From positions 1 through 64,000 of the forward strand of contig NIVC01003975.1 of assembly GCA_002269645.1 (NCBI GenBank): 64,000 bases of DNA. Direction: 5' to 3'. This DNA comes from Macrostomum lignano. Lineage: Eukaryota. Made by a program: the position numbers and the translations under genes. The notes below the pieces were generated by a model, which saw nothing but the letters and a program-made list of their open reading frames with translations, was not told the DNA's origin and did not search any database. Of this stretch, positions 1,059-39,400 are shown piece by piece (the first letter of the stretch is position 1; the number at the start of each line of letters is the position of its first letter).

Positions 1059-2744
1059 ATGCTGCTGCTTTCTGTGGCTCTGGCCGCACTGCTCAGCTGC
1101 TCTCACGCACACAAAATTTTCCAGTCCCGAATCCCGAACGGCGATCGCGTCCCGAACCCGTGCCAGCCAGGCGCCATCTGGGCCGGAGTCGGACACCAGA
1201 GTCCCGCCGGCGCTAACGCGAGAAACCCCTTCGGCTTGGACTTCAAGGCGGCCGGGCTCCAGTGGACGGTCGACCTGTGCCGCAAGGACTCAGACGGCGA
1301 CGGACTCACGAACGGCCAAGAGCTCGGAGACCCCGACTGCGTGTGGAAGGTCGGTGCGGCTCCGTCGAGAACGACTGGACTGTCCCACCCTGGCATCTGC
1401 CCGCTCGACTCCGCGACGTGCAAGAACTCGTGGACCGTGTGTCCGAAGGCCTTCAGCTGTCCAGCATTCGAAGAGCCCGGTGTTTTCGTGAGAAACTTCA
1501 CCCTCAAACCGACTCCCGTGCCCGCCACAGAGACAACCTACATCTGTCAGGCGTTCGAGCTGAACAACACTGCCTCTCCGGTTCACCTGATCGGATCGAG
1601 GCCGATCATTGACAACAAGAACGTCATGCACCACATGATTATGTATGTCTGCAATGTCAAGCCCGCAGAGACGCTTTTCAATAATTCACAACCGTGTTTC
1701 ATGCCCATTGGAAACTGCACCGAGTTGCTGAACCTCTGGGCCTATGGACTCGAAGGTGAGTGCATCAACAGCAACGCGGGATTCCGATTTGGCGGTGAGG
1801 GTATTCGGTATGGAGTTTTGCAGCTTCACTGGAACAACCCGATGAGGATTTCTAACTACACAGATGCTTCTGGCTTCGCTCTTTACTTTACACAAAACCT
1901 TCGACCATACGACTTGGGAACTCTTATGTATGGCGAGATAAATCTTGTTCTTCCACCGCGACAGCCGTTGATCAGCGTGAACCACACGTGCCCTTCGGTG
2001 TGCACGAACCGGTACCACACTGAGACTCGCTACATCACCGCCGTACTCATTCACATGCACGCTTATGGCATTAAAGGACGCATCTCGCTGTGGAGAAACG
2101 GAACTATGATTAAAGACCTGTCTCCTCTTCAAGTGTACGATTTCAAATCCCCGAAGGTGCACACTTTCGACCCACCGATCGAATACCGGAAAGGTGACGA
2201 AGTAAAGACCGAATGCTACTACAGCACACTAAAAAGCAACGTTACCATCTTCCTTGGAGAAGGCGCCAGAGATGAAATGTGTTTCGCTTTGATATACTAC
2301 TATCCGAACAATGTAGCCCAAACTAACCATGACAAGCTCGGACACTGTGTCGCTGTATCTGGAATCAACCGGTGCTGGGTGGAGAGCGGCATCACTCCTC
2401 AGATCGAGAGGGGTTGCAACATCACCGCGATGCGAAACGGTGACATGCCGAAACGAGTTTATTCTGAAATGGCCGCCAACAAGTGCTTCTCTCGGACCGG
2501 CTGCGACCCGCTGTGCCGCAACTACCTGGAGAACACTCTCTGGCCCAACAATGCCTGCTACGACCCGAAGCGCTCGCGTCAAATGGCCGAAGTGTTGGCT
2601 CTGGGTGTCTTTCAGCTCAATGCGGCTGTGACCCGTACCATCTCGGCTACTCTGTTCGGTCAGAGATTTTGCGAGCAGGAGATCAAAATGCTGGCAGAGA
2701 TGAACCGACAGGCTGCTCCAGCTCAGACAAATACCATCGCCTAA
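1059..2744 (+). CDS. Secreted temptin-domain copper type II ascorbate-dependent monooxygenase (DBH/MOXD/PHM family), single exon, 561 aa
   Basis: Signal peptide MLLLSVALAALLSCSHA; temptin-like region (IPNGDRVPNPC...GVGH...NPFGLDF...LCRKDSDGDGLTNGQELGDPDCVW...SHPGIC); CuH ligands MHHM and QLHWNN; CuM ligands IHMH and DEMC; Cys-rich tail; no TM helix. Confidence 0.9.
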   Translation: MLLLSVALAALLSCSHAHKIFQSRIPNGDRVPNPCQPGAIWAGVGHQSPAGANARNPFGLDFKAAGLQWTVDLCRKDSDGDGLTNGQELGDPDCVWKVGAAPSRTTGLSHPGICPLDSATCKNSWTVCPKAFSCPAFEEPGVFVRNFTLKPTPVPATETTYICQAFELNNTASPVHLIGSRPIIDNKNVMHHMIMYVCNVKPAETLFNNSQPCFMPIGNCTELLNLWAYGLEGECINSNAGFRFGGEGIRYGVLQLHWNNPMRISNYTDASGFALYFTQNLRPYDLGTLMYGEINLVLPPRQPLISVNHTCPSVCTNRYHTETRYITAVLIHMHAYGIKGRISLWRNGTMIKDLSPLQVYDFKSPKVHTFDPPIEYRKGDEVKTECYYSTLKSNVTIFLGEGARDEMCFALIYYYPNNVAQTNHDKLGHCVAVSGINRCWVESGITPQIERGCNITAMRNGDMPKRVYSEMAANKCFSRTGCDPLCRNYLENTLWPNNACYDPKRSRQMAEVLALGVFQLNAAVTRTISATLFGQRFCEQEIKMLAEMNRQAAPAQTNTIA

Positions 2745-2938
2745 CCTCTGAACACCATCATGCGAATAGTTGTGACATTCAAGTTGAACAACTGGTCGTT
2801 GGTCCGTGCAGTCGAACCAAGTGTTACTTTTTGGTTGCGGTTTATAAAACATTTGACTGGTTTACGCTTAACTGTGGAGTATTTAACTTTTCAAATAACG
2901 TTTGCTTGTTTTTTGTCTGAAATTTAATTGAATGTTTC

Positions 2939-2944
2939 AATAAA
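2939..2944 (+). terminator. Candidate polyadenylation signal of monooxygenase 1
   Basis: AATAAA about 195 bp after the stop in an AT-rich 3' UTR. Confidence 0.5.
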
Positions 2945-3419
2945 TATTAGTTTTATGATTAGGCATTACACTTAAACTATAGTTGACTATTCTTTCTCCT
3001 TCCAAGACAGAAAGGTATTTCTCGCAGGCCTGGCTCCTACGAAAGTTTCAAACAGAATTCCTACAACAATTTGCAAGCAATCGAGATTACATGTAAGCCC
3101 ATTGCCAAGATTCAAGAAATCAATGTTTTCAGTTTGTAACATATTAGTTGTAACGCTGACGAATGTATGCTTTATATTCTCACAACATTTATCGCATCCA
3201 AGTAAGCCTTGGACTAGTTGAAATTACATTGAGCAGTCCTGAAGACGTAAGAGTGCACTGAGCGACTCGCTCTAGGAAGGAGGAGCACTGAAGTTGCCCC
3301 CCCCGAGAGTTTCCCGCAATACTTTAATTTTTACTGCAGTGCAGTTAGCTTCACGCGGATTTTGTCTGCATTGCATTTTGCCCCCAGTTTTTATGAAAAT
3401 GCTGAAAAATTCCTTAAGT

Positions 3420-4655
3420 CGGAAAATTGTTTGACGCTTCATAAGAAAATACAGCTCATACATATAGGAAACCTCTGTTTTGAGTTATTACCACAACCTA
3501 GTTATGCTATGGTCAACAATGGTTGTCTGGGCAGAGCCGCATGGTTCAAAGTATAATTAGTGATTATCTGCTCATCAGTAGCCCTTTAATCGTTGCTACA
3601 TCGCCAATTTGTTGTTCTTCTCCTGTATTGATCACAAAACTAGCACTGCTTAGATGCAGTTGTCGTGGCTGAAGTGAGCCAATGGCTTCAACGATCCTTT
3701 AAAAGCCTTTAACTGGCTGGCCGATGATTTTTCCCTCAAAAGCCACAAGATACGGACAAGCTGAAGGAATTTCTAATGAAGGAAACAAATACAATCGCAT
3801 AGTCAAGACTTGGCCTATCGGTACGCTTTCCACCATCTGAAGCAAGAAGCAAGAAGCAAAAGCAAGTTTGTATTTAGCTTTGCCAACATGGAGACTGTCA
3901 GAAAGCTTCTGACCGAAAAAAGGAAGGACCTCACTCGGGAGAAGGTGACGTCCGTGGCCAGTGCATGTGAAGCCGCGACGCCAATGTGAAAGAAAAAATG
4001 AAAGAAGTGACGCTTTTCTGATCAATAAAACGGCTCCACAACACAAGCTGGATACAAGACAGAAAGATCACAAAACATCCACTTTAGTCTCGTCGGAAGT
4101 ATAACCAACGGAATCAAGGAGACCAAGTAAACTGCTTCTGCTGTGACAGGAACAGACACCACAAGGACGTGTGCCGACATCGTTCGAAAATGTGCTTGAC
4201 CTTTGGAAAGACAGGTCATTTCAAAGCTGCGTGCAGATCAAGTATCTCCAGAACAGTTGAAGTGGAGTGGAGTTGAGACACTTTGAGGAAGGCACGGAAA
4301 GACACTATTGATACTAAAAAGAGAGAAACGTAACTGAAGTATCTGGCAGAACTGAATAGACAGAACTGACTGAGATCAGAGTCATCAGAGAGATGATCGC
4401 AGTCAGCGCACATGAAATGCAACTGACTGACTGCGCTATTCTACCCCTAGGAAGACTAGGTGACACACGAACTATTGCGAACTCTTGGACGGTACCAAGG
4501 TCTATTTGGGAGGAGTGTTTGACGCCTTGTAAGAATAAAGAGCTCATATGCTAAGTTATCCATTTAAGTTATTCCAACGGCCTAGTTAATCTATGGTTAA
4601 TAATGTGTGAGCAGAGCCGCAGGGCTCAAAATATAATAAGCGTCTGCTCAAGCTA
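3420..4655. repeat. Diverged direct repeat pair of about 150 bp (about 3420-3575 and 4510-4655)
   Basis: tgtttgacgcttcataagaa...cctagttatgctatggtcaacaatg...gcagagccgcatggttcaaagtataat matches tgtttgacgccttgtaagaa...cctagttaatctatggttaataatg...gcagagccgcagggctcaaaatataat. Confidence 0.55.
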
Positions 4656-6149
4656 CATCACCGCTCAAGCGTATTAGTGATGTAGATATGCACGAGTGTA
4701 TAAGCACTGGAAAAGCGCTTACATCGGAGTGAAAAAAACAACGACCTCTTCTCGTCTCGAACAGAGCTATCCAAGCAGACCAGCTCCAGGCTAGCCGATC
4801 TCAATGCCCAATAACGAAGCAGTAGAGGTTTGAGGGCCAATCCAGCAGCCTGCATATGCGTGACAAAGAAAACTGGCAGCAAATGCTTGGGGAAATTGAT
4901 GGTTGCCTAGCGCTAAAGCCTTACCCCGCTAAAACAATTCAATTTTTTTATATGGTGCCTGCGTTATTTTTGACCATAAAATACACTGCCTTAAATAGAT
5001 ACTCAGTTCTGCGAATTTTGAGATGTGAGCCTCACCTCACCTCACCTTTGGAGGCCAGTGCGTCTGAAAGTCTTTCTGTCTTGTATGCATATAAGATAAC
5101 AGAAAAATAAAACCTGTTATAAAACCTGATGATAGCTTTTGCTGGAATAGAAGAGTTTTTGGTAATACGAGTAAGTAGAAACTGGGGGAAGAGGCAAACC
5201 TTTAAAGAAAGACTCAATTTTTTACTTTTGGCTCATAATGTACTTCATTTTCATGCTATAAGAGTAGCGTTTTGAACAACATGCTGGTTACTAGAAGTGG
5301 AGTTGACAGTTTTAGATCCGGCAGCACTTAAATCGGCTCTGCTTCCATCGGACTATCAGGGTGAATCTCATCACTCTAATAGAGACAGTGTGAAGTTTCT
5401 TCGTCGAAAGCTTTTAGAAGCCACTAATCAATGTCTGTCTCTTAATTCGCCTGCTAATTTCAGATATTCTTAGACAGACAGGTTAGTACGCTGGTATTGT
5501 AGATTTAGGGGTAGTACTATAAAGCTGTCGTAGCGTAAGTTCGATCGCACGTCAGAACTTTTACACTGCGGAGATCGGACCTAAGAACGATCTTATCTTA
5601 CGATGGCTTTATAGAACGAGCCCTTAGGGTTCTTGATCTTGTAGCTAATTTATGTATCAATCTATAAAAATCGCATTGGTATTTTTACTATACTGTTTGC
5701 CTTAAATTTACTGTCCTTTCTTCTAAGCAACCGACAAATACAGTTAAATCTTACATTTAAAGCATTGTTTTTTATGGTTCGCGCACCCATGCATTGATGG
5801 TATTGCTGCATGGCATTGTACCAGGACGCGCAATAAGCGCTATTGTGAAAGCGTGCTTAAAAGGCTTGTGATCACGTATTGGCTAGTGTAATGTTGTGCA
5901 CTAGAAATTTAGCTACAAATATCGTGATTACAATATAGCTTTTTGCAGCCCATTTAGGGCTTACGCCCATTGAATTTAATCCAAGATACGTTTTTTAGTG
6001 CTATGGAGTTTTGTCCATGGTAGCTCGTAGGTCGTAGCACAGCGGATATTAATTCGGTCCAACGAGCATCAATTTAGTCCGTAGCTTCATTTGCAACTGC
6101 TGCGGAGGAGCAAGATCAGCCCCAGAATTGTGGACCACATGCTAGGCTG

Positions 6150-6620
6150 TCGAACTCGAGCGAATGCCATAATCGGCGCGCTTGACGGAGATGAACACCC
6201 AAAGGACATTGCAAGGTTGTTGAATGTAAAAGAAAAGATAGGTTTACAGCATCCATCAGCGCGCTTAAACTACTGCCAGCATAAGTCGCCTGCGAAAGGG
6301 TAGCAATCGCCAAGGCAAGTTGCTGGAGCCTCAGGTCCAATACTCAATGGAATTGAGAAACCCTTTGTTGACGCTGTAGAAAATACAGTAGAAGTTAATT
6401 AGGAACAGCTCCAGTTGGTTATCAGATTTCGACTATCAGCAGAGCTCTGGAAAAGTGACTGATAATTGTTGTTAGAGACGCTGAAATTCCAGCGTTACGC
6501 GACAACCTACTGACGGTTGCGAGAAGGCAAGAGTTCGCCAAATGGCTCACGGACGTTTGGACCAAATTGTTGTTGGACCAAATTAAATGCCGCGGTCATC
6601 AACGATGGTAATCACGCACT
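6150..6620 (+). mobile_element. Decayed IS630/Tc1/mariner-type transposase relic
   Basis: Broken frames give RANAIIGALDGDEHPKDIARLLNV (HTH-like), VYSIHQRA*TTASISRLRKGS...RNPLLT, ISTISRALEK and RRQEFAKWLTDVWTKLLLDQ, in the order expected for a Tc1-family N-terminus; stops and frameshifts present. Confidence 0.45.
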
Positions 6621-9117
6621 GGAACATGGATGAAGTAATATCATGGATTTGCTCATCTGGGAAATGTCTCCCCCCCATCTTGGGTAGTCCCCCGCTTCAA
6701 TTGCATTGGCTGAGTGAGTCTATAAATACTTTCCTCGTTTCAAAGTTATTGGTTTTAGCTTATGTTGGGGCCACAGACAATTTGCAGATGAACAATCCAT
6801 GCATTTCCTTAAACTATGGGCTGTAGGCAGGGATGGGAGGTCACTAGGTGCATTTCACTTGGGTGAATTTGGACAATAGCGCGGAGGTTGGGGTGGGTAG
6901 GGAATGAGTCATCGGGGGGGACCTGAGTATCGGGTATCGCTGGTTGGGATCGGGCATGGACGGCGCATTGGGAAAAAAGACATTTAAACTTTTGTAAACA
7001 ACTGTACATTGATTTGAGCAATCCTGGACCTGCGGAGCTTTCAGCGGTAATGCTAATCAGCCTTAAAGTGTTCGTTCCTACCGCCATCGAGCTAGCTTTA
7101 TTACATCAGAGTTGTGTGATTTGATAGCGATGGCTTATCAATTTTGGGAAGCAAACATCCGAAATCCGGACGACTCTGATGACGGCAGAGGACGAGAGGA
7201 CACGGCAGAAGATGCAGCGACAATGCAGCTGCTGTACAAAAGCAGTTTAAGGATTTTGGAGCAGCCGACCTTACCCAGGAGGGTCGACTTTCAAATCGAA
7301 AGCAAGTCGTCTGTAGATCCAGCTGTACGTAAGCAACTCAGGTACTGTTTGGCACGCTGCTACGTTATTATTATGCATATCTACTGTTTTTTTCAGGTGC
7401 ACTTTACTTCTTTTAATTCCCCATTTAAGGTTTGTAATAGCGCCGGGTGCTTTATTCATTACTAGGCATTAGACTCATTTTTATCAATGCTCTGCATCAT
7501 TAAATTGTATTTGTCAAAATGTTTTGGCTTAAGATCTACGAGTAATCTGATCGACCCTTGCTAGATCATTTGGTCCATTTGGCCAAGTTCCCTTATTTAC
7601 TGCTTTGTGGTCCCTGTGTGTGTGTTTTCAGCGCGTCATTGATAACATGCGTGTTTAGTGATAACCGAAATCATTGGTCAATATCATAAATTCACACTGA
7701 TTTATACGAGCGTACAGCTTAAATCGACTTAGATACAACAGATGCGATTCAGGATAGTACTCAACACAAATCCACTTACACTCTACTGTACTGACGTTGA
7801 GTTTTAGGCCAGTCTCTGTGAGTCCGGTCTATGATATCCGTATGCGCGGAGAGCTCTCGTGCACTCTAGGAGGATCGACTCGTATGACTATCGCGACCCC
7901 ATTGTTCGATTCCGTGTGCGCCCACATTGATCTGGGGCTGTCGTGCAGTTCACAGCCGTGAGGGCCAACCCCCAAGGCTCAGAGAGTGTACATGCCTGAC
8001 GATTAGACAGTCAAAGGGCAGTCGAATGGGCGGAATTGCCTCAGGAAGAAATTATGAAACGATATCACCGAAGGCGTCCTGCAATTTTTTGTATTTCCTA
8101 ACAGCTTTTCCCAAGCGCCCAGCCAACTCCAACCCTCTATCTGTCCGTGCAGCTCAAGAGCTAGAGTGTTGCTCAGTGCATCTTTTAGTTAAAATTGGTT
8201 TGACCAAATTGAGTTGGGCCGTACGCGCGTTCCTCGCCAATAAGGCTGACAATATCAGTAGGCAATTTCATTTTTAATATATTTGATTTGATTTCGATCA
8301 TGGCGTATCCGGCTTTAAAAGCTTTTTAAACTTGGGGTTGAATTGACTACAGCGGGGATAGGGATCTATCAATAATATACGACTCGTATATACTTACTCG
8401 TAGTAAGGCTCGTGTGTAAGCCTTCACTCGCCACTCCATCAGCAACCACAAATGAAAGTCGCAGATCTAATCTTCTTTTTCGTGCTTTAATATTGAGTAA
8501 AATTTTTACCAGTTCGACCCTATTTCGTACAGACCATATTTCACAGTCGTTTGATTTGCTAGATAGAAGAGCAGCTAATCAAGCATCGGGGACTACGACT
8601 GTGGATGCACTCTACAAAACAGGGGGTGCTTTTTCTCTAAATGCAACGTCGAGATAAATTTTCAGCTGTTTAGCACTAAAAATTCACAATATCTTATCTT
8701 CAAGACTTCCGAATTGGAAACAGAGCACGCATCGTACTAATATCGAATTATATCGAATTTGCAAGAAAATGTACTCTTAGGCTTACTTTTTGGCGATATA
8801 CGGTACTTGTAGATAGTCACTACCCAGCTAAGTGAACTAAACAGCTTATTATTGCTGAAAAATTTTGATTTATATTTATATAGAAGACTCGCGAAAAATG
8901 AAGTAAACATAGTGAAGAATATTTAAATTATTAGCACAAGAAAAGCTGCATAAATTTAGTAAAAACTACCGGATAGATTTGTTCTCAAGCTATTAATTTG
9001 GGCAGTGCAGTCGCAATTGACTTATGGTTTGGTTTTTTCACACGAAAGGAACAAGCACTAAAATTGAATTTGAATGACAATGCTACAAATAGAGATTAAG
9101 GAACGCACCGTAAAATA

Positions 9118-9123
9118 TTTATT
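9118..9123 (-). terminator. Candidate polyadenylation signal of monooxygenase 2
   Basis: TTTATT on + (AATAAA on -) about 150 bp past the stop at 9273. Confidence 0.5.
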
Positions 9124-9272
9124 AGTGTTAATATTTGAGTCTTTAAGTCTTCGACTTTGTATTGATTTAGCAAAAATGTTTTTTTGACGTGAGGTGGAAA
9201 GTCATTGGTCAGTATACAGTATAGTCGTCTTCTGCGTTAATGGAATTCTCTATTGTCAGCACGTCTCGCAGT

Positions 9273-11090
9273 TTAGCTTCTGTGGTTGAGCCTGATTGAC
9301 AGATAGGTTAGCAGAGCCAAAAACAGAACAAACCCCAGGCAGCTGCACACAACGATGATGATCAGCAGGTGCTCGGAGGTCAACCCGCTTTTTTGGAGAA
9401 TCGGCGCAGCCGGCAGCGCCTCGATGAGTTTCGTTGGAGCTGGAGCATTCAACAAATTGATCTCCTGCTCGCAGAAGCGCTGTCCATACAGAGTACGGGC
9501 GATTGTTTCGTGATTAGATGACGGTACCATGCCCAAAGCCATGGCTTCAGCCATCTGTCTCGACCTTGTCGGGTCGTAGCAAGCATTTAAGGGCCACAGA
9601 GTGAAGTTCAGGTAGTTTCGACAAGCTGGATCGCATCCAGTCCGAGCAAAGCAGTTGTTGGCGGCCATTTCCGACATCACTCGATTCGGCATTTCTCCAC
9701 TCCTCATCGACGTGATGTTACAGTCTCGTTCCACATGCGGAACTATGTTGCTTGCAACCCAGCACAAGTTGATTGCAGCTATAGCCATACACTGGGTCAG
9801 TCTCTCTGACGCAGGAACCCTGGCCTTATTTGGATACAACCACAGAAATGACAGGCACATTTCGTCATTTTTAGCGGCTCCAGAAAATACCGTCCGGTCA
9901 TTCTTCAGTGTGGTAAAGTAGCACTCTGTTTTCAATTCATCTCCGGGTTGATACTCAACCGTTTGGTTCAAGAAAATAACTTTTGGAGAGTTGTAACTGT
10001 ATTCCTGGAGCGGCCAGATGTCCCTCACTAAAGTTTCATTCCTCCAGAGAGAAATGCGTCCTCTAATACCGTTGGTGTGCATGTAGATGCCTACTCCTGT
10101 GATGTAGCGAGTCTCAGTGTGGTACCGGTTAGTGCACACCGAAGGGCACGTGTGGTTCACGCTGATCAACGGCTGTCGCGGTGGGAGAACGAGATTTCCC
10201 TCGCCATACATCACAGTTCCCAAGTCGGATGGTCGCAGGTTTTGTGTAAAGTAGAGAGCGAAGCCAGAAGCGTCGGTGTAGCCTGAATGCCTCGCCGGGT
10301 TGTTCCAGTGAAGCTGCAAAACTCCGTACCGAAAGCCATCACCGCCGATTCGGAACCCCGCGTTGCTATTGATGCACTCGCCTTCGAGTCCGTAGGCCCA
10401 AAGGTTCATCATCTGGGTGCAGTTTCTGTGGCCCATTAAACACTGCCGTGGATTATCGAACAGCGTCTGTTCTGGCTTGACACTGCAGGCGTACATAATC
10501 ATGTGGTGCATGACGTTCTTGTTGTCGATGATCGGCCTCGATCCGATCAGGTGAACCGGAGAGGCAGTGTTGTTCAGCTCGAACGCCTGACAGACGTATG
10601 TCGTCTCAGTGGCGGGCACGGGAGTCGGTTTGAGGGTGAAGTTTCTCACGAAAACACCGGGCTCTTCGAATGCTGGACAGCTGAAGGCCTTCGGACACAC
10701 GGTCCACGAGTTCTTGCACGTCGCGGAGTCGAGCGGGCAGATGCCAGGGTGGGACAGTCCAGTCGTTCGCGCCGGAGCCGCACCGACCTTCCACACGCAG
10801 TCGGGGTCTCCGAGCTCTTGGCCGTTCGTGATTCCGTCGCCGTCCGAGTCCTTGCGGCACAGGTCGATTGTCCAGCTGAAGCTGGCGGCCTTGAAGTCCA
10901 AGCCGAAGGGATTTATAGCGTCAGCACCGGCGGGACTCTGGTGTCCGAGTCCGACCCAGATGTCGCCTTGCTGGCACGGATTCGGGACCCGGTCGCCGTT
11001 CGGTATTCGGGACTGGAACATTCTGTACGCGTGAGAGCAGCTGAGCAGTGCGGCCAGAGCCGCATATATTATCAGCGCATTTTTTGTCAT
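9273..11090 (-). CDS. Membrane-anchored temptin-domain copper type II monooxygenase paralog, single exon, 605 aa
   Basis: Same architecture as 1059..2744; signal peptide; MHHM, QLHWNN and DEMC intact; the HxH motif reads IYMH; C-terminal hydrophobic helix HLLIIIVVCSCLGFVLFLALLTYLSI followed by a short basic tail. Confidence 0.9.
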   Translation of the reverse strand: MTKNALIIYAALAALLSCSHAYRMFQSRIPNGDRVPNPCQQGDIWVGLGHQSPAGADAINPFGLDFKAASFSWTIDLCRKDSDGDGITNGQELGDPDCVWKVGAAPARTTGLSHPGICPLDSATCKNSWTVCPKAFSCPAFEEPGVFVRNFTLKPTPVPATETTYVCQAFELNNTASPVHLIGSRPIIDNKNVMHHMIMYACSVKPEQTLFDNPRQCLMGHRNCTQMMNLWAYGLEGECINSNAGFRIGGDGFRYGVLQLHWNNPARHSGYTDASGFALYFTQNLRPSDLGTVMYGEGNLVLPPRQPLISVNHTCPSVCTNRYHTETRYITGVGIYMHTNGIRGRISLWRNETLVRDIWPLQEYSYNSPKVIFLNQTVEYQPGDELKTECYFTTLKNDRTVFSGAAKNDEMCLSFLWLYPNKARVPASERLTQCMAIAAINLCWVASNIVPHVERDCNITSMRSGEMPNRVMSEMAANNCFARTGCDPACRNYLNFTLWPLNACYDPTRSRQMAEAMALGMVPSSNHETIARTLYGQRFCEQEINLLNAPAPTKLIEALPAAPILQKSGLTSEHLLIIIVVCSCLGFVLFLALLTYLSIRLNHRS

Positions 11091-13234
11091 TATTTCTGCG
11101 CTATTGCAAGTTAAACTAAAATTGTATTGAGCTAATTAATGCATTAAATACTTATGTCAAGATTTAGAGAGAAAGGCATGTGCAGAGCTCTACGTGAAGA
11201 CCACTGTGAGAAATTAGTAAATTTAGTATACAACGTGCGTAGGCTTTAAGCGGGCAATTATAAGTAATAATAGTGTGCACAATGAAACGTGCGCAATTTA
11301 ATTAGATTACGCGGATAATTACGCGGTTAATTAACAAAATTCAGCATCAAATGACCAGCGGGGCATCACGCTAACAGTGCAGTCAACAATAAGAGAATAT
11401 AGGGCATGGTGCATCATTCCAGTGGCAGTTGGCAGATCCGGCTTCAAAAATCTTCAAAGCAACTAGCAACGAATCGTTTCACCATGAATTCTTTGGTTAC
11501 CACCTCTACCGTTATGCTTAAAGTAACTTGCCTGACACAGGGCATTAGCGTTTACACTATTCTTGATTTCAAAAGTAAGTCCAGTACAGTATTGGACTAC
11601 TGAGCATTTGAAATTTTACTGCCAACTTGACTGATTAAGCATTAGGATTTAAACTAGAGTTAGAATTGTGGTGGTAGTAAGAAAATCTATGTTAGGGTTG
11701 TGGCCCGGCAGTTGTGTGACCAAACTGTCGAATTCAGCATTTTTGTCGAATTCAGCAGTCAAAAATAAAAAAGGCAGTCAAATGACATGGAGTCGTCGAT
11801 AGGTCCCTATCCCAGCTATAGTCAGCCTAAGCCAATTTCGAAATTGCTCGCTCGTATCCCATTGGCGGTTCCCATTGGGCGGCAAAAGCACGGACGAACT
11901 GAAATTGGAGCGCATGACTTCTTTGGCTCGCAATTGAGGCACTGAACTGCACAGACATATGGAGGGCAATCGAGAAGGGTTGGGTGGTAGGGTAGTTTGG
12001 GCGTTAGTAGGGAAGCGCTGTTAGCTCCTCTGACTTACTGTCTTACAATATACCCCGGGAGGCTATTGGAGAACTTTGTGCACATAAAGATATTATATAC
12101 CAGGCGAAATAACTGAGCACAAGTGGCGGACGGATCCACTCAACGTCAGCACAGGAGAGTGGGTAGCTAATTTCTAGTTCGCCTCCGAATCGAGACTGTC
12201 GCTTGATAACTAAAAATTGGTTATACCAAAATAACCCATTGGTAACATATATCCATATATTAAAAATTATAAGCTAATATTGTAATATTCACTGAAAGGG
12301 GGAATAAACTTTCAGCAGAATTTGCGGTAAGTTCTTTATTTACTTTTTATCATACGTGGATCGGTTTTGACCGCAAAATAAAGTAGTTTCTGCATACGAT
12401 ATTGCAAAGGTAGATTTAAACGTACAAGATATCGTTACATACAAAAGAATGATAAAAAGCATCAAAAGATACGAGTATACATGCAGCCGAACTATGTAAA
12501 TTACGAGTGTATATACATGTACAGGCAAAAGTTTAGGTCAAAGACCGAATGATCTACAACATTAGTTCGTTCAATGACCAACGTCATACACCAAGAATCA
12601 AGGTAATAGACCATAGACTAAACTACGCTTGTAGTTGCCATATACCGCAGACCCAGGGTCTTGGACATAGACAATTGTTTGTTTCAGTCATGTTGATAAA
12701 ATAGCCAGTCAATTTGATAATCCCATTTCGCTGCAACAACAGTCTACTGCTACAGAACTGCACTTGACCATAGACAATACACACAATAAAGCAAATTGAT
12801 TGGAAGATTTCGTTAAAAATCACTAATTTTAGAAATCAAGTTGCGTAGCCAGAATTTATGCTGTGACATTTTTTATTTCATTGTCTTTTTAGTCATTAAA
12901 TTGCCGATGCATTTATGGAATCACAAAGGAAAAAATTCATAAAAATGAAGCTCAGTCATGTAACTGCTCTTATCAATTAGAAAAATCTGCCAGTGGAGTC
13001 GCTGAATGGCGTAATAATTGCCCTTTTAACTCGTCATTGTGTCCGGGTAAAAGTTCTTTACAATGCCAGCCTTTGCGATTTGAAACTTATCTGAACTTTA
13101 CTATTGACGCTTTAATAAGTTACATATTGTCGAAAGCTCTCTGGTCATTGATGTTTGAACAGTATATTGCTCTCTCTTCACAGATCATCGCCCTCAACTC
13201 GAGGACCTTGCTACAGCGGCTACAAATATACGCG

Positions 13235-14347
13235 ATGTTACTTTCAACCCTGTCAAAGGGTCTCCTTCGGCCAGGAACAGTGATAGCCGTTGCCGTGGTA
13301 ATGCTCCTGAGCCTGTACTTGTTCAGCCAATTTCACCAATGCTGCAATGGCGATCCCCAGCTACTGGGCAGCTCGTTGTGGGGCATTGACAGCGATTCGA
13401 AACTGATAGAGCCAACCGTCAGCGACGCTTGTTACCATAGTAACCTGCTGAATCGTCTAGCAGAGGTGACCGCAGATCAGGCTGAAGTGCGCAGACAGCT
13501 GCCAATCAAGCCGGGCTTCTACGCTACGCTGGAAACGCCAGTCGACCTGGCCAATCTGACGTCAGAGTCGTGCGCCAACGCTGTTGCGCCAATAACTGTC
13601 AACAGAATTTTGAATGATTCCAACTGCTTCAGGCATTTCGCCAACTCAAGAGACATGGCCGAGGTGTACAGGCAGCTGGGCCACCTGTTCTCCAATTTCA
13701 CCAGTAGGGGCTTGGAACTTTTCCTACTTGATGGTAGCTTGATCGGCTCGGTGCGGCACTTCGGCCTGGTGCCGTGGGACGACGATTTCGACTTCGGCAT
13801 CAGAGTGGATCAGAAGTCGCAGGTTCGCTACCTACTCGAGGAGCTTTCTAAAAGCTCGACGTATTTATTTCTGGACACCGAGGCGCTGAACATGCACTGG
13901 AAGCTCGGGATCCGGTGCGAATTGGTGAACGGCACCAAGTCCTGCCTACTTGCTGTCGACCTGTTTCTAATCCGAAACTCCGGTCGCTGGTTTATCCGAC
14001 TGGAACAGCCCAGGGTATTTTCTATTGAGGATGTCTATCCGCTCAGCTGGAGGCCTTTCGGCCCCGGTCTGCTGCTGCCCTCCCCAAGGCGGCCTCTGCG
14101 CTTTCTCAGGCGGCAGTACAAATCCGACGTGATGCGGCAGTGCCACTATCAGCCTCACACCAGCACCGGGTGCTCGAAGCCCACCATGACGTGTCAGGCC
14201 ATTCGAGCTCTTGGCCGGCATCCGTTCGTTGAGTTCGTCCGCTTGCCGGCACCCTCGACAGGCTGGCCAGGAGAGAAGAACATCACTTTGGAGCTGTTGC
14301 TATGGAAACGGTATTTGATTTCAGTGTTTCTGCCTTACGGCGACTGA
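13235..14347 (+). CDS. LicD/fukutin-related nucleotidyltransferase-fold phosphotransferase, type II membrane protein, single exon, about 370 aa
   Basis: N-terminal TM segment VIAVAVVMLLSLYLF; LicD signature LFLLDGSLIGSVRHFGLVPWDDDFDFGI; later VDLF and PSPRRPLRFLRRQY. ATG at 13235 chosen because it precedes the TM anchor; the ORF-track start at 13037 is TTG. Confidence 0.85.
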   Translation: MLLSTLSKGLLRPGTVIAVAVVMLLSLYLFSQFHQCCNGDPQLLGSSLWGIDSDSKLIEPTVSDACYHSNLLNRLAEVTADQAEVRRQLPIKPGFYATLETPVDLANLTSESCANAVAPITVNRILNDSNCFRHFANSRDMAEVYRQLGHLFSNFTSRGLELFLLDGSLIGSVRHFGLVPWDDDFDFGIRVDQKSQVRYLLEELSKSSTYLFLDTEALNMHWKLGIRCELVNGTKSCLLAVDLFLIRNSGRWFIRLEQPRVFSIEDVYPLSWRPFGPGLLLPSPRRPLRFLRRQYKSDVMRQCHYQPHTSTGCSKPTMTCQAIRALGRHPFVEFVRLPAPSTGWPGEKNITLELLLWKRYLISVFLPYGD

Positions 14348-16487: not shown

Positions 16488-24014
<7,527 letters not shown>

Positions 24015-25508: not shown

Positions 25509-25603
25509 ATTGACATTCACAAATACTCCTGTCTGTCTGTCTGTCCGTGTGTCTGTCTGTCTGACTGTGTGTCTGTCTGTCTCTCTATCTGTTTGTCTTT
25601 CTT

Positions 25604-25657
<54 letters not shown>

Positions 25658-25661
25658 CGTG

Positions 25662-25712
<51 letters not shown>

Positions 25713-25797
25713 GTCCGTCTGTCTGTCTGTCTGTCTGTCTGTATCCGTCTGTCTGTCTGTCTGTCTGTCCGTGTGTCTGTCTGTCTGGCTGTGTCTC

Positions 25798-25834
<37 letters not shown>

Positions 25835-26013
25835 GTCCGTCTGTCTGTCTGTCTGTCTGTATCCGTCTGTCTGTCCGTGTGTCTGTCTGTCTGTCTGTGT
25901 CTCTCTGTCTGTCTGTCTGTCTGCCTGTCTGTCTGTCTGTCTGTGTCCGTCTGTCTGTCTGTCTGTATCCGTCTGTCTGTCTGTCTGTCCGTGTGTCTGT
26001 CTGTCTGTGTCTC

Positions 26014-26059
<46 letters not shown>

Positions 26060-26199
26060 CGTGTGTCTGTCTGTCTATCTGTGTCTCTCTGTCTGTCTGT
26101 CTGTCTGTCTGTGTCCGTCTGTCTGTCTGTCTGTCTGTCTGTCTGTATCCGTCTCTGTCTGTCTGTCTGTCCGTGTGTCTGTCTGTCTGGCTGTGTCTC

Positions 26200-26236
<37 letters not shown>

Positions 26237-26581
26237 GTCCGTCTGTCTGTCTGTCTGTCTGTATCCGTCTGTCTGTCTGTCTGTCCGTGTGTCTGTCTGT
26301 CTGTCTGTGTCTCTCTGTCTGTCTGTCTGTCTGCCTGTCTGTCTGTCTGTCTGTGTCCGTCTGTCTGTCTGTCTGTATCCGTCTGTCTGTCTGTCTGTCC
26401 GTGTGTCTGTCTGTCTGTGTCTCTCTGTCTGTCTGTCTATCTGTCTGTCTGTCTGTCTGTCTGTCCGTGTGTCTGTCTGTCTATCTGTGTCTCTCTGTCT
26501 GTCTGTCTGTCTGTGTGTCCATCTGTGTGTCTGTCTGTCTGACTGTGTGGCTGTCTGTCTCTCTATCTGTTTGTCTTTCTT

Positions 26582-26647
<66 letters not shown>

Positions 26648-26651
26648 CGTG

Positions 26652-26688
<37 letters not shown>

Positions 26689-26702
26689 GTCTGTCTGTGT
26701 CC

Positions 26703-26736
<34 letters not shown>

Positions 26737-26977
26737 ATCCGTCTGTCTGTCTGTCTGTCTGTCTGTCTGTGTCCGTCTGTCTGTCTGTCTGTCTGTATCC
26801 GTCTGTCTGTCTGTCTGTCCGTGTGTCTGTCTGTCTGTCTGTGTCTCTCTGTCTGTCTGTCTGTCTGCCTGTCTGTCTGTCTGTCTGTGTCCGTCTGTCT
26901 GTCTGTCTGTCTGTATCCGTCTGTCTGTCTGTCTGTCCGTGTGTCTGTCTGTCTGTGTCTCTCTGTCTGTCTGTCTA

Positions 26978-27010
<33 letters not shown>

Positions 27011-27076
27011 GTGTCCATCTGTGTGTCTGTCTGTCTGTGTGTCCATCTGTGTGTCTGTGTATCTGTCCGTCTGTCT
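25509..27076. repeat. Compound (CTGT)n microsatellite
   Basis: Direct inspection. Confidence 0.97.
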
Positions 27077-28029: not shown

Positions 28030-35841
<7,812 letters not shown>

Positions 35842-36477: not shown

Positions 36478-39400
36478 TCAAGCGTCCTCAGTGGCCACAT
36501 TAGCCTGAGCAGGGGCATAATACAGGCCCTGTTTGACGTGCAGGCGCAGTCGCAGTTGATCCGGACCGCTGAACACGCCGCTAGCAAAGCCGGGACAACG
36601 GCAGGCGGCTTCAACTACGGCAAATTTGCTGACGGCCGATTCGTGAGTAGATTCGGTCCGACGGTCGAGTAGGAATTCTAGGAGGCTGGGCTCTGCTGCG
36701 ATGAGGCTGGCAGCCCAGTCCTGTGTTGGCGATGGCATTTGAAACAGTAAGGATAATAGTCGCTAGTCAATGTACACAATCTCAAATTACTCTATACTCT
36801 GTAATATAGAAAGAAGAAAAAATAATTTTATAACTACTTTATAGAAGCCTAAGACGTCAGCTTCTATTTTTAGAACTAACCTATACTATATGACGTCTGA
36901 TTCTATTTTTAGAACTAACCAATAAAATATGTCGTCAGTTTCTATTTTTAGAACTAGTGGCCTATACTAGCTTTTATTTTTAGAACTAACCTATACTATA
37001 TGACGTCTGATTCTATTTTTAGAACTAGTGGCTTATACTATATGACGTCAGTTTCTTTTTTGAACTAACCTACAATATATGACGCCAGTTTTTATTTTTT
37101 TAATTAACCTTTTGTGGCGGCCAGACTGTACGCGACCGGCAGCACCAGTGCAGCCGCACTGGAAACCCTCCAACCTCTGTCTAGCTGAGGTGGGGTGGTT
37201 GCGCACCAGGCTAGCCGGCTCGCTAAGCCAAGGGGGTTGGCGTAGCCTATCACGCCACGCCACCTGTTCGCACCTTCCTTGGGCCCTCATGAATCTCGCG
37301 CAGTTTGTGTGAATATAAATATATGCGCAAAGCAGCACAAAACTCTTCGCTGCCATTCTATCTATTGAACTAATTAAGGCCTTACGCCTCACTATACTAT
37401 ATGACGTGAGTTTCTATTTTTAGAACTAACCTACATTATATGACGTCAGTTTCTATTTTTAGAACTAACCTACACTATATGACGTCAGTTTCTATTTTTA
37501 GAACTAACCTACACTATATGACGTTAGTTTCTTTTTTAGAACTAACCTACACTATATGACGTCAGTTTCTATGTTTAACAATAAAAAGGGAATCTACAAC
37601 CGACACAACAGGCAATATATATTAATAATGAATCTAACCTGTTCCGCAATAGCAGCCAGCAGCCCGAACGCTTCTAATCGAATTTCCGGAAACGGCACCC
37701 GCGCAAGTTTTTCAATCTCGGCCAAACGCAAACTAAGCGGACCGGACCAGAGTCGCTCGGCCACCGTGGCGGCTTCTGATCGCTCGGCAGCGGACCAGTC
37801 GCCGTTCACCTTGAGAAGGTCTCGAATGGCCGCCAAAGCTCGGGCGCGCGGCTCCGAACGAGGCGAACGCCGGAGAATCTCGGCCAGTGGCCGCACCAGC
37901 TCCGGCCGGGCCAAAGCGGCCGATTTTCCGGCGACCGAGCCGGCGCCAATGTGTCCGACGGTTGCCATGGCAACGAAAGCATCCTGATCGGTCGAGGAGT
38001 TCGAAGCTAGTCCGTCCTGCAGGCTGGCTAAAAATCCCGGACAGGCAGACAGGACAGCGTCCGGGTTGGGAGCGGCGGCGGTCACGTGACCAAACAGACG
38101 CATCAGCTGCGGCCTGAGCAGCGAGGCGATGACGTCACCGCCGCTGGGTGACAGGAGTCGATCAAGGCGAAATAGAAGGCCTGATCTAAAGATAACAAGA
38201 CTGACTACTCAGAGATGATGATGTTAATCTAAATCTTAAGATTTACTACAATCATTCTAAAGGGTTCCCGATTATTCATGTAACTCTTTAGATGATAAAT
38301 TTAAGTACCTGAATTATCTATACAATTTCCTAGATTATTAACCTAAATTCCCAGATTATCAACCTAAATCCCTAGATTATAAACCTAAATTTCCAGATGA
38401 TCAACCTAAATCCCCAGATTATCAACCTAAATTCCCAGATTATCAACCTAAATTCCCAGATTATCAACCAAAATTCCCAGATTATCAAACTAAATCCCCA
38501 GATTATCAACCTAAATTCCCAGATTATCAACCTAAATTTCCAGATTATCAACCAAAATTCCCAGATTATTAACCTAAATTCCCAGATTATCAACCTAAAT
38601 CCCCAGATGATCAACCTAAATTCCCAGATGGTCAACCTAAATCCCCAGATGATAAACCTAAATACCCAGATGATCAACCTAAATTCCCAGATTATCAACC
38701 TAAATTCCCAGATTATCAACCTAAATTCCCAGATGATCAACCTAAATCCCCAGATTATCAACCTAAATCCCCAGATTATCAAGCTAAATCTCTAGATGGC
38801 GAATCCCGGATCCCCAGTCTCACCTCTGCAGCCAGGCCAGCCCGTGATGACACATGGCCAGCAGCCCCAGCACCTCTAGACAATTAACCGCCAGCAGAGG
38901 ATCAGAGCCGATCCCAGATCCGCCCTCCGTTCCAACAGCGTCTTCAACTAATCGTCCCAATAGGCCAGCCGTTTCCATAGCAACCAACGCGGCCGGATTT
39001 CTAACCGCCAATCTGGCCGCCAATTCCAAGCCGCGCATTCGAACAACCGGGCTCTCGCGGCGGCACACCCGATCGGCGAATACGTTGGACAGGTCGCCGG
39101 ACAGCAGCCGACAATCCAGCCCGTTGCTGCGGCCGCCGGAGGCTGCGGCCAGCCAAAATTTTGACGCAGACACGGCTAATGAAACTCCTTCATCATCGTC
39201 GCCTTCGCCTTCGCCGAGCAGATTGGCGAGGCAGCGGAGTAGGCCGTGATTCCAGGCTATTTCGGAATCTGAATCCGACTGAAATCATTGGATTAATGAA
39301 AACCGATATAATAGATGCTTTGTTGAGATCCCACATCCTGGAGTGCTGAGATCCCACATCCTAGTGTTGAGATCCCCCATACTGGAGTTTTGAGATCCCA

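What the first reader, a model, noticed from the sequence alone, without database searches (positions are those of the whole stretch)
1059..11090. Secreted/membrane-anchored monooxygenase pair in which the anchored copy has lost a CuM ligand (HMH -> YMH)
Seen: copy 1 has the full PHM/DBH ligand set (HH..H for CuH; H-x-H..M for CuM) and no TM. Copy 2 keeps CuH and the Met but has TAC (Tyr, 10083-10085) in place of the first His of H-x-H and has gained a C-terminal TM helix. Established: both CuM histidines are required in PHM/DBH, and DBH acts as a dimer. Inference: copy 2 may be a pseudo-enzyme that tethers or regulates the soluble active partner at the cell surface, or an enzyme with altered Tyr-ligated chemistry, giving a two-component extracellular oxidation system.
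Basis: partly seen in the sequence, partly recalled or inferred. Interest (0 to 1): 0.7.

Follow-up and report, generated by a model that had tools for sequence, protein, structure and literature searches.

The report
Flatworm copper monooxygenase paralog, His-to-Tyr
Two neighbouring flatworm genes belong to a known, duplicated family of copper enzymes; one really has a tyrosine where an essential copper-binding histidine should be, so it is probably a crippled enzyme copy, but nothing supports the idea that the two genes form a dedicated two-part system.

Summary
The window is Macrostomum lignano contig NIVC01003975.1. It carries two convergent single-exon ORFs: copy 1 at 1059-2744 (+) and copy 2 at 9273-11090 (-), which is Mlig007919. 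Both have the architecture Temptin_C + Cu2_monooxygen + Cu2_monoox_C. Copy 1 has all six copper ligands and no TM helix. Copy 2 has TAC (Tyr336, 10083-10085) in place of the first CuM histidine, plus a C-terminal TM helix. The Tyr is not an assembly error, because all four assembled copies of the gene carry it.

- The TM anchor is ancestral in this clade. Copy 1 lost it and copy 2 lost the cytosolic tail.
- The two genes are not sister paralogs. They form the end of an array of at least four genes that evolves by gene conversion.
- Copy 1's nearest relative is the anchored, fully liganded Mlig017064/Mlig027408.
- Ligand-degenerate paralogs recur in this family. One, Mlig002911, has lost five of six ligands.

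Copy 2's CuM domain accumulates amino-acid changes about five times faster than its paralog's, yet dN/dS stays near 0.2. The most likely reading is a catalytically impaired paralog (an early pseudoenzyme) that acts alone. An active Tyr-liganded enzyme is not excluded. Interest is modest.

The parts
1059..2744 (+). Copy 1: a 561-aa single-exon ORF with signal peptide, Temptin_C, Cu monooxygenase core and Cys-rich helical extension. It has no TM helix and a full ligand set. Homology to paralogs runs only from 1059 to 2741.
   Evidence: Comparing the two alleles (window against L002) gives dN/dS = 0.17, with binomial P = 1e-7 against neutrality.
2052..2060 (+). Copy 1 CuM motif His332-Met-His334 (CAC ATG CAC).
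   Evidence: codons read directly; column is 100% H-M-H in 139 relatives.
9273..11090 (-). Copy 2 (BOX15_Mlig007919): a 605-aa single-exon ORF with signal peptide, Temptin_C, Cu monooxygenase core, Cys-rich helical extension, a TM helix and a 6-residue tail.
   Evidence: AlphaFold mean pLDDT 90.9, pTM 0.82; Foldseek best matches are DBH 4zel and PHM.
10077..10085 (-). Copy 2 CuM motif Tyr336-Met-His338 (TAC ATG CAC). The Tyr codon is 10083-10085.
   Evidence: The same codon is present in the other assembled copies.
9294..9368 (-). Copy 2 transmembrane segment LLIIIVVCSCLGFVLFLALLTYLSI. It is nearly identical at DNA level to the TM of paralog Mlig027408. DNA homology stops at 9286, so the ancestral cytosolic tail is missing.
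9822..10100 (-). Copy 2 CuM domain, the part that has escaped gene conversion. The boundary lies at codon 330/331, five codons upstream of Tyr336. Amino-acid change is accelerated here.
   Evidence: Tajima relative-rate test gives 23-28 unique changes in copy 2 against 4-5 in P0002, chi-square 11.6-18.
10609..10768 (-). A 160-nt run identical to copy 1 (1369-1528). It lies within the 5' halves that gene conversion has homogenised.
1369..1528 (+). The matching 160-nt identical run in copy 1.
2745..9272 (.). A 6.5-kb spacer between the two 3' ends. It has no Pfam-matching ORF and no internal repeats.

Best explanation
The two ORFs are neighbouring members of a tandem array of at least four genes in Macrostomum lignano. 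The array order is Mlig028174, Mlig017064, copy 1, copy 2 (Mlig007919). All belong to the lophotrochozoan 'Temptin/DBH-like' copper monooxygenases. The ancestral protein of this flatworm clade is a type I membrane protein with a signal peptide, a Ca-binding Temptin domain, the two-copper catalytic core, a Cys-rich helical stalk, a TM helix and a cytosolic tail.

Shown:
- Copy 1 is a 3'-truncated derivative of the Mlig017064 lineage. It lost the TM helix and tail, keeps all six ligands and is under purifying selection. It is probably a secreted, active enzyme.
- Copy 2 is an older lineage. Gene conversion keeps overwriting its 5' half (Temptin and CuH domains). Its CuM domain has stayed separate, changes amino acids about five times faster than its paralog's, and carries His336Tyr. 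It has also lost the cytosolic tail.

Inferred:
- By analogy with PHM H242A, the Tyr site holds or cycles CuM copper poorly, so canonical hydroxylase activity is lost or strongly reduced.
- Copy 2 would then be an early-stage pseudoenzyme kept for a non-catalytic role, such as surface binding through the Temptin domain and the substrate pocket.
- This is the first step of the path that paralog Mlig002911 has completed.
- Copy 2 acts on its own, not as a dedicated partner of copy 1.
For: Architecture and fold.

Tyr is real and fixed in four assembled copies.

His is invariant at this column in 139 of 139 relatives. About 249 of 293 proteins in a wider survey keep all six ligands.

PHM H242A loses the M-site copper and its activity (PMC12164859).

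The TM anchor with tail is shared by all other clade members and the outgroup. Copy 1's stop codon is conserved in the L002 allele and no TM remnant lies downstream.

Copy 1 is sister to Mlig017064/Mlig027408.

The four-gene array is seen on NIVC01000757.1 and NIVC01000861.1.

Mosaic gene conversion.

Domain-specific rate acceleration, with dN/dS 0.19 in the CuM domain.

Full-length gene models for copy 2 in an RNA-seq-evidence-based annotation.

Precedent for retained dead paralogs: Mlig002911 reads RH / no His / YMQ / T and keeps an intact ORF in three copies. Degenerate members with the same architecture occur elsewhere.
Against: No biochemical data exist for any member of this family.

Copy 2 has lost only one ligand. 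It deviates at just 6 of 107 family-conserved columns, against 4 for copy 1, which also fits an active enzyme.

Retention of the other ligands tells us little. The CuH ligands lie in the gene-converted half, and two CuM ligands surviving by chance is not unlikely.

Recent constraint on copy 2 is unresolved: 11 nonsynonymous against 7 synonymous differences between alleles, P = 0.11.

dS in the CuM domain is near saturation, so the branch dN/dS is only bounded, at roughly 0.4 or less.

No orthologue from another Macrostomum species was found to date the substitution.
Confidence: 0.45

Rival explanations
1. Copy 2 is an active enzyme with a remodelled CuM site. Either Tyr-O takes part in coordination, or the site is His/Met with water. 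Reactivity or substrate range is altered (neofunctionalisation).
For: Only one ligand has changed. H338, M411, all structural Cys and most invariant columns are kept. The CuM domain has been kept apart from gene conversion, with the tract boundary five codons before Tyr336. The acceleration is confined to the substrate/O2-binding domain while dN/dS stays below 1. The model is high-confidence and native-like.
Against: The histidine is invariant in all other liganded members. Replacing it in PHM deletes the M-site copper. From general coordination chemistry (my own knowledge), phenolate is a poor ligand for the Cu(I) state that CuM must reach. In two other family members the same H-to-Y change accompanies loss of further ligands (P0006, P0210), which suggests it is a decay step.
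Confidence: 0.25
2. One reading: copy 2 is a membrane tether or regulator that heterodimerises with the soluble copy 1 to form a two-component extracellular oxidation system.
For: The genes are adjacent and convergent, and this arrangement is conserved on three contigs. One product is soluble and liganded, the other anchored and ligand-deficient. DBH forms disulfide-linked dimers (PMC4846438).
Against: The TM anchor is ancestral and copy 1 lost it. The two genes are not sisters. Anchored, fully liganded paralogs sit in the same array. DBH's dimerisation domain is not detected, since alignments cover only the catalytic core, and PHM works as a monomer (my own knowledge). Copy 1 has only a 136-aa partial gene model. 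Adjacency is what tandem duplication produces anyway.
Confidence: 0.08
3. Copy 2 is functionless and drifting: a recently disabled duplicate on its way to becoming a pseudogene.
For: Amino-acid change in the CuM domain is five times faster. The conserved cytosolic tail is lost. Differences between alleles are not significantly depleted in nonsynonymous changes.
Against: Four intact 605-codon ORFs exist. dN/dS is about 0.19 across a domain with dS of about 1. All structural cysteines are conserved. Full-length transcript-based gene models exist.
Confidence: 0.17
4. The Tyr codon is a sequencing or assembly artefact.
For: The assembly is long-read based and contains indel errors. One example is a 1-nt deletion in a CCC run in the copy 1 allele on L004.
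Against: The change is a substitution, not an indel. It is present in four separately assembled copies, including one that differs at 18 other sites.
Confidence: 0.01

Closest known systems
[quoted passage not shown] 2009, PMC2762978). In databases they are named DBH-like, tyramine beta-hydroxylase-like, MOXD1 homolog or Temptin.
   Same: Identical domain order: signal peptide, Temptin_C, Cu2_monooxygen, Cu2_monoox_C. There are hundreds of homologues in molluscs, brachiopods, bryozoans and annelids at 35-45% identity. Copy 1 has the family's full ligand set.
   Different: The Macrostomum clade ends in a TM helix plus a cytosolic tail, whereas most relatives end in a terminal hydrophobic segment. 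Copy 2 replaces the invariant first CuM His with Tyr. Copy 1 has no anchor at all.
Peptidylglycine alpha-hydroxylating monooxygenase (PHM) and dopamine beta-hydroxylase (DBH)
   Same: The same two-domain catalytic core by sequence (E = 5e-24 to DBH, 5e-13 to PHM) and by fold (Foldseek E = 1e-26 to 1e-20). The ligand positions are the same.
   Different: The N-terminal domain is Temptin_C, not DOMON. DBH's dimerisation domain is not detected. Substrate is unknown. Identity is only 20-26%. Copy 2 has Tyr at the PHM H242 / first DBH H-T-H position.
Mlig002911 (P0006), a fully ligand-degenerate paralog in the same genome
   Same: Same architecture and TM anchor. It also has Tyr at the first CuM His (YMQ). 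Its ORF is intact in three assembled copies.
   Different: It has lost five of six ligands and 20 of 107 conserved columns, against one ligand and 6 columns for copy 2. There is no sign that its Tyr codon was copied into copy 2.

Membership tests
[quoted passage not shown] | Two-domain catalytic core (Pfam PF01082 + PF03712; PHM-like beta-sandwich fold) | tested here: met
   Both copies score above the Pfam cut-offs. The copy 2 model matches DBH and PHM structures at Foldseek probability 1.00.
[quoted passage not shown] | CuH site: three histidines (HH...H) | tested here: met
   Copy 1 has H191, H192 and H257. Copy 2 has H195, H196 and H261.
[quoted passage not shown] | CuM site: His-x-His plus Met | tested here: not met
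   Copy 1 meets it (H332, H334, M407). Copy 2 does not: it has Y336, H338 and M411. Copy 2 is therefore a homologue of the family, not a demonstrated functional member.
[quoted passage not shown] | Binds two Cu per chain and hydroxylates a substrate with ascorbate and O2 | not testable with these tools
   This needs recombinant protein, metal analysis and an activity assay.
Lophotrochozoan Temptin/mono-oxygenase hybrids | N-terminal Temptin domain in place of DOMON, fused to the monooxygenase core | tested here: met
   Temptin_C scores E = 2e-38 (copy 1) and 4.5e-37 (copy 2). There is no DOMON hit. The architecture is described in PMC2762978.
Lophotrochozoan Temptin/mono-oxygenase hybrids | Restricted to Lophotrochozoa | tested here: met
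   The source is the flatworm Macrostomum lignano, GCA_002269645.1. The named homologues found are from molluscs, a brachiopod, bryozoans and an annelid.
Dopamine beta-hydroxylase proper | DOMON domain and a C-terminal dimerisation domain with inter-chain disulfides | tested here: not met
   There is no DOMON hit. The sequence alignment to 4zel covers only query residues 157-421, which is DBH 183-458. Foldseek aligns about 300-340 columns, i.e. the core only. A structurally divergent dimerisation module in residues 426-548 cannot be excluded.
Pseudoenzyme (catalytically dead homologue retained by selection) | Loss of an essential catalytic or cofactor residue | tested here: met
   Copy 2 has Tyr for the first CuM His. 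This residue is essential in PHM and invariant in relatives.
Pseudoenzyme (catalytically dead homologue retained by selection) | Retained under purifying selection and expressed | tested here: inconclusive
   There are four intact ORFs, dN/dS is about 0.19 in the CuM domain, and transcript-based gene models exist. However, the rate is five times higher and the allele comparison is non-significant.
Pseudoenzyme (catalytically dead homologue retained by selection) | Demonstrated absence of catalytic activity | not testable with these tools
   This needs an enzyme assay.

The most novel reading that the evidence does not exclude
Copy 2 is a naturally evolved PHM/DBH-type enzyme whose CuM copper is held by His, Met and a tyrosine (or a Tyr-derived cofactor). 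This would give the two-copper scaffold a different oxidative chemistry at the cell surface. Selection would then have protected its distinct CuM domain from the gene conversion that homogenises the rest of the gene.
Probability: 0.12. Interest if true: 0.65.

Novelty: new variant of a known kind. Interest (0 to 1): 0.3.

Why it matters
If copy 2 is a retained dead or altered enzyme, it is a clean natural experiment on the CuM site of the PHM/DBH fold. It carries a single ligand swap in an otherwise intact protein. Beside it in the same genome sit a fully liganded sister-type gene and a fully degenerate relative. Macrostomum lignano is an organism where RNAi and transgenesis work (PMC5730564, PMC7053086).

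It also shows three features of the large, biochemically uncharacterised lophotrochozoan Temptin/DBH-like family. The family repeatedly spawns ligand-degenerate members. It changes its mode of membrane attachment. It evolves by domain-limited gene conversion.

None of this bears on a long-standing open question, so the value is modest.

Tried and rejected
1. Search for orthologues of copy 2's diverged C-terminal half. It returned nothing, not even the protein itself, so the result cannot be interpreted. The age of the Tyr beyond the M. lignano homeologues stays unknown.

2. Expression data. The gene identifiers Mlig007919, Mlig017064, Mlig028174, Mlig002911 and Mlig027408 do not occur in the searchable full texts. 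They are also absent from the held supplements of PMC5730564 and PMC12896417.

3. Shared origin of the Tyr in copy 2 and Mlig002911 by gene conversion. Local nucleotide identity around the codon is no higher for copy 2 than for copy 1 or P0002 (69% against 71% and 68%). Their grouping in the CuM-domain tree has only 33% bootstrap support. Rejected as unsupported.

4. A transposon or gene in the 6.5-kb spacer as the cause of the two 3' truncations. There are no Pfam hits and no repeats.

5. A nonsense point mutation as the cause of copy 1's TM loss. Rejected, because homology to paralogs ends at 2741 and no TM remnant is found downstream in any frame.

6. A remnant of the cytosolic tail after copy 2's stop codon. 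A weak tblastn extension was not confirmed at DNA level, where homology ends at 9286.

7. Heterodimer modelling and measurement of the Tyr-Cu geometry. Neither is possible with the tools, which fold single chains and return no coordinates.


Full report
SOURCE AND ANATOMY. The copy 2 protein is found, by exact sequence, on Macrostomum lignano assembly GCA_002269645.1, contig NIVC01003975.1. Window coordinates equal contig coordinates. The region holds two convergent, intron-less ORFs: copy 1 at 1059-2744 (+), 561 aa, and copy 2 at 9273-11090 (-), 605 aa. They are 74% identical. Both match Pfam Temptin_C, Cu2_monooxygen and Cu2_monoox_C. Neither has a DOMON domain.

An AlphaFold model of copy 2, built on a 101-sequence alignment, is confident (mean pLDDT 90.9, pTM 0.82). 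It shows an N-terminal signal-like helix, the two beta-sandwich catalytic domains, a helical Cys-rich extension (about residues 426-548) and a terminal TM helix at 572-604. Its best structural matches are human DBH and rat PHM, over about 300-340 columns, which is the catalytic core.

THE OBSERVATION. Reading the codons directly gives the following.
- Copy 1: HH at 1629-1634, H257, HMH at 2052-2060, M407.
- Copy 2: HH, H261, TAC-ATG-CAC (YMH) at 10077-10085, M411.

HMMER alignment to DBH 4zel puts Tyr336 on the first His of the H-T-H CuM motif. Copy 1 has no TM-grade hydrophobic segment. Copy 2 has one at residues 575-599.

The Tyr is not an error. The same gene is assembled on three more contigs (Mlig007919 g1, g3, g4). 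One of these differs at 18 other positions, and all read YMH. The column is His in 139 of 139 other family members.

I also surveyed 293 family proteins, including 150 representatives from a search of 1.84 billion proteins. About 249 keep all six ligands.

1. The TM anchor is ancestral. Every other member of this flatworm clade has a TM helix followed by a 19-50-residue cytosolic tail. This covers P0002, P0003, P0006 and the outgroup P0008 from M. lignano, and P0004 and P0005 from another sample. Copy 1 stops at ...TNTIA*, just before where the TM would be. The stop is at the same place in the L002 allele, which is 97% identical. Homology to paralogs ends at 2741, and no TM remnant lies downstream in any frame. 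So copy 1 lost the anchor. Copy 2 keeps the TM helix, but DNA homology ends at 9286. The tail, with its conserved Y-x-x-Y-[DE]-N-like motif, is replaced by RLNHRS*.

2. The 'pair' is the end of a larger array. On contig NIVC01000757.1 the order is KBP, Mlig028174, Mlig017064, copy 1, copy 2, PHO4, all within about 45 kb. The same genes lie together on NIVC01000861.1. The window contig simply starts 1058 nt upstream of copy 1. Mlig028174 and Mlig017064 have complete ligand sets. Mlig028174 and the g4 copy of Mlig017064 are TM-anchored.

3. Copy 1 and copy 2 are not sisters. Copy 1 is 85% identical to Mlig027408/Mlig017064 (dS 0.28), against dS 0.58 to copy 2. In the C-terminal half it groups with them at 99% bootstrap.

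CONCERTED EVOLUTION. Sliding-window synonymous divergence is mosaic. Copy 1 and copy 2 share a 160-nt identical run, 1369-1528 against 10609-10768. Codons 241-320 of copy 2 are nearly identical to P0002. From codon 331 onward copy 2 is strongly diverged from both (pS 0.5-1.0). The boundary lies five codons upstream of Tyr336.

In the Ca-binding segment (copy 2 residues 76-100), all M. lignano paralogs use nearly the same synonymous codons (96-97% nucleotide identity), even those with dS above 1 elsewhere. The two homologues from another species do not. This is gene conversion within the genome.

One consequence follows. The CuH histidines of copy 2 lie in sequence that liganded paralogs keep refreshing, so their retention says nothing about selection on copy 2.

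SELECTION. In the CuM domain (residues 319-425), copy 2 carries 23-28 lineage-specific amino-acid changes, against 4-5 in P0002. The Tajima relative-rate chi-square is 11.6-18 with three outgroups. There is no asymmetry in the Temptin or CuH domains.

Pairwise dN/dS for residues 291-425 is still 0.19, with dS about 1.06, which is near saturation. All structural cysteines are kept. Copy 2 departs from only 6 of 107 family-conserved columns: V48L, G57D, G201A, H336Y, P377T and T407K. Two of these (columns 57 and 201) also differ from the family consensus in the other clade members. By comparison, copy 1 departs at 4 columns and Mlig002911 at 20.

Between copy 2 alleles there are 11 nonsynonymous and 7 synonymous differences. 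This is not significantly different from neutrality (P = 0.11). Copy 1 alleles give 15.5 against 26.5, which is dN/dS 0.17 and P = 1e-7.

In summary:
- Copy 1 is clearly a constrained coding gene.
- Copy 2 has been constrained over the long term, but with a relaxed or redirected CuM domain.

EXPRESSION. The deposited annotation is built from RNA-seq evidence: StringTie/TACO assemblies, de novo transcripts, and TBONE boundaries (PMC5730564). Copy 2 has full-length 605-aa models on three contigs, including the window's, and a partial model on a fourth. Copy 1 has only a 136-aa partial model (P0151, on three contigs including this one). That model covers a stretch nearly identical to Mlig017064. 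Full-length expression of copy 1 is therefore not established.

MECHANISM. In PHM, the H242A variant binds one Cu instead of two, keeps no more than about 5% activity and forms no CuM-CO complex (review PMC12164859).

Ligand-degenerate relatives recur in this family.
- Mlig002911 reads RH / no His / YMQ / T and is kept intact in three copies.
- Several unrelated representatives with the same Temptin architecture have lost two to five ligands.
- One of them (P0210) also has Y at this position.

The best-supported reading is that copy 2 is a catalytically impaired paralog, an early pseudoenzyme, displayed on the membrane and working on its own (confidence about 0.45). I cannot exclude an active enzyme with a remodelled CuM site (about 0.25). 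That view is favoured by the single-ligand change and by the CuM domain having stayed out of gene conversion. A drifting, functionless copy is less likely (about 0.17).

The tether or heterodimer model gets about 0.08. Adjacency is explained by tandem duplication. The anchor is ancestral. Anchored active paralogs exist in the same array. DBH's dimerisation domain (PMC4846438) is not detectable here.

COMPARISON WITH WHAT IS KNOWN. The Temptin/mono-oxygenase fusion was described in 2009 as a lophotrochozoan novelty (PMC2762978). Its members are widespread in molluscs, brachiopods, bryozoans and annelids and turn up in mantle and shell-matrix transcriptomics (PMC11464482). Among the papers I found and read, none characterises a member biochemically.

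Copy 1 is an ordinary member apart from its lost anchor. Copy 2 is a homologue that fails one defining feature, the His-x-His...Met CuM site. The Tyr variant, the domain-limited gene conversion and the recurrent ligand loss do not appear in the papers I could search.

VERDICT. This is a new variant of a known kind, of modest interest.

Noticed in passing
window 10791-10865 (-) and 1272-1346 (+); also L005, L008, L010: The 75-nt segment encoding the Ca-binding motif CRKDSDGDGxTNGQELGDPDCVW uses nearly the same synonymous codons (96-97% nucleotide identity) in all five M. lignano paralog lineages, even those with dS above 1 elsewhere. Two homologues from another species (Logan SRR28338163) use different synonymous codons. 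This points to genome-wide concerted evolution of the Temptin domain.
   Followed up: partly
window 1059-2744: Copy 1 is a 561-codon ORF under clear purifying selection (dN/dS 0.17 between alleles). In the deposited annotation it exists only as a 136-aa partial protein (P0151). The gene model looks under-called.
   Followed up: partly
L010 6001-7902 (Mlig002911, P0006): This paralog has lost five of six copper ligands (RH, His261 deleted, YMQ, Met to Thr). It still keeps an intact 633-aa ORF with a TM anchor in three assembled copies, so it is a full pseudoenzyme in the same family.
   Followed up: partly
L008 1-1159 and beyond (Mlig017064 g2/g3, P0152) compared with P0153 (g4): Two assembled copies of the neighbouring paralog end in a frameshifted tail (…ARPPLLQRRRRAA, 577 aa) that removes the TM helix. 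A third copy is 641 aa with the TM helix. This is either an assembly indel or a second, independent loss of the anchor.
   Followed up: no
L004 about 18779 (copy 1 allele on NIVC01000757.1): This allele has a single-base deletion in a CCC run and is otherwise 100% identical to the window's copy 1. It is most likely a long-read assembly error. It also splits the tblastn match to copy 1 in two at that point.
   Followed up: partly
window 1059 and 2741; 9286: Homology of copy 1 to its paralogs starts exactly at the ATG and ends at the last sense codon. Copy 2's homology ends 11 nt before its stop. Both 3' truncations face each other across a unique 6.5-kb spacer, which hints at a single rearrangement. 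The cause is unexplained.
   Followed up: partly
family-wide (P0009-P0120): 83 of 144 wider-family members end in a hydrophobic segment, usually within 8 residues of the C-terminus, which looks like a GPI-anchor signal. Only the Macrostomum clade has a TM helix plus a cytosolic tail.
   Followed up: no
window 13037-14347, 16488-16976, 32032-32580, 37594-38103, 57233-62275: Neighbouring genes are a LicD-family protein, a PHO4 phosphate transporter (also next to copy 2 on the other contigs), a protein kinase, a PSMD5-like fragment (just below the Pfam cut-off) and CFAP43 coiled-coil exons.
   Followed up: partly
window 14821-63055: Long minisatellite and microsatellite arrays are very dense. Examples: a 21-nt unit x 94 at 17017-18990 directly after the first PHO4 exon, (CTGT)n at 25529-27076, a 45-nt unit x 33 at 51311-52798, and a 23-nt unit x 61 at 39321-40701. 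They generate many spurious long ORFs.
   Followed up: no
tool behaviour: A homology search with residues 300-605 of copy 2 returned no hit at E <= 1e-30, not even the identical database protein P0001. That negative result should not be used.
   Followed up: no
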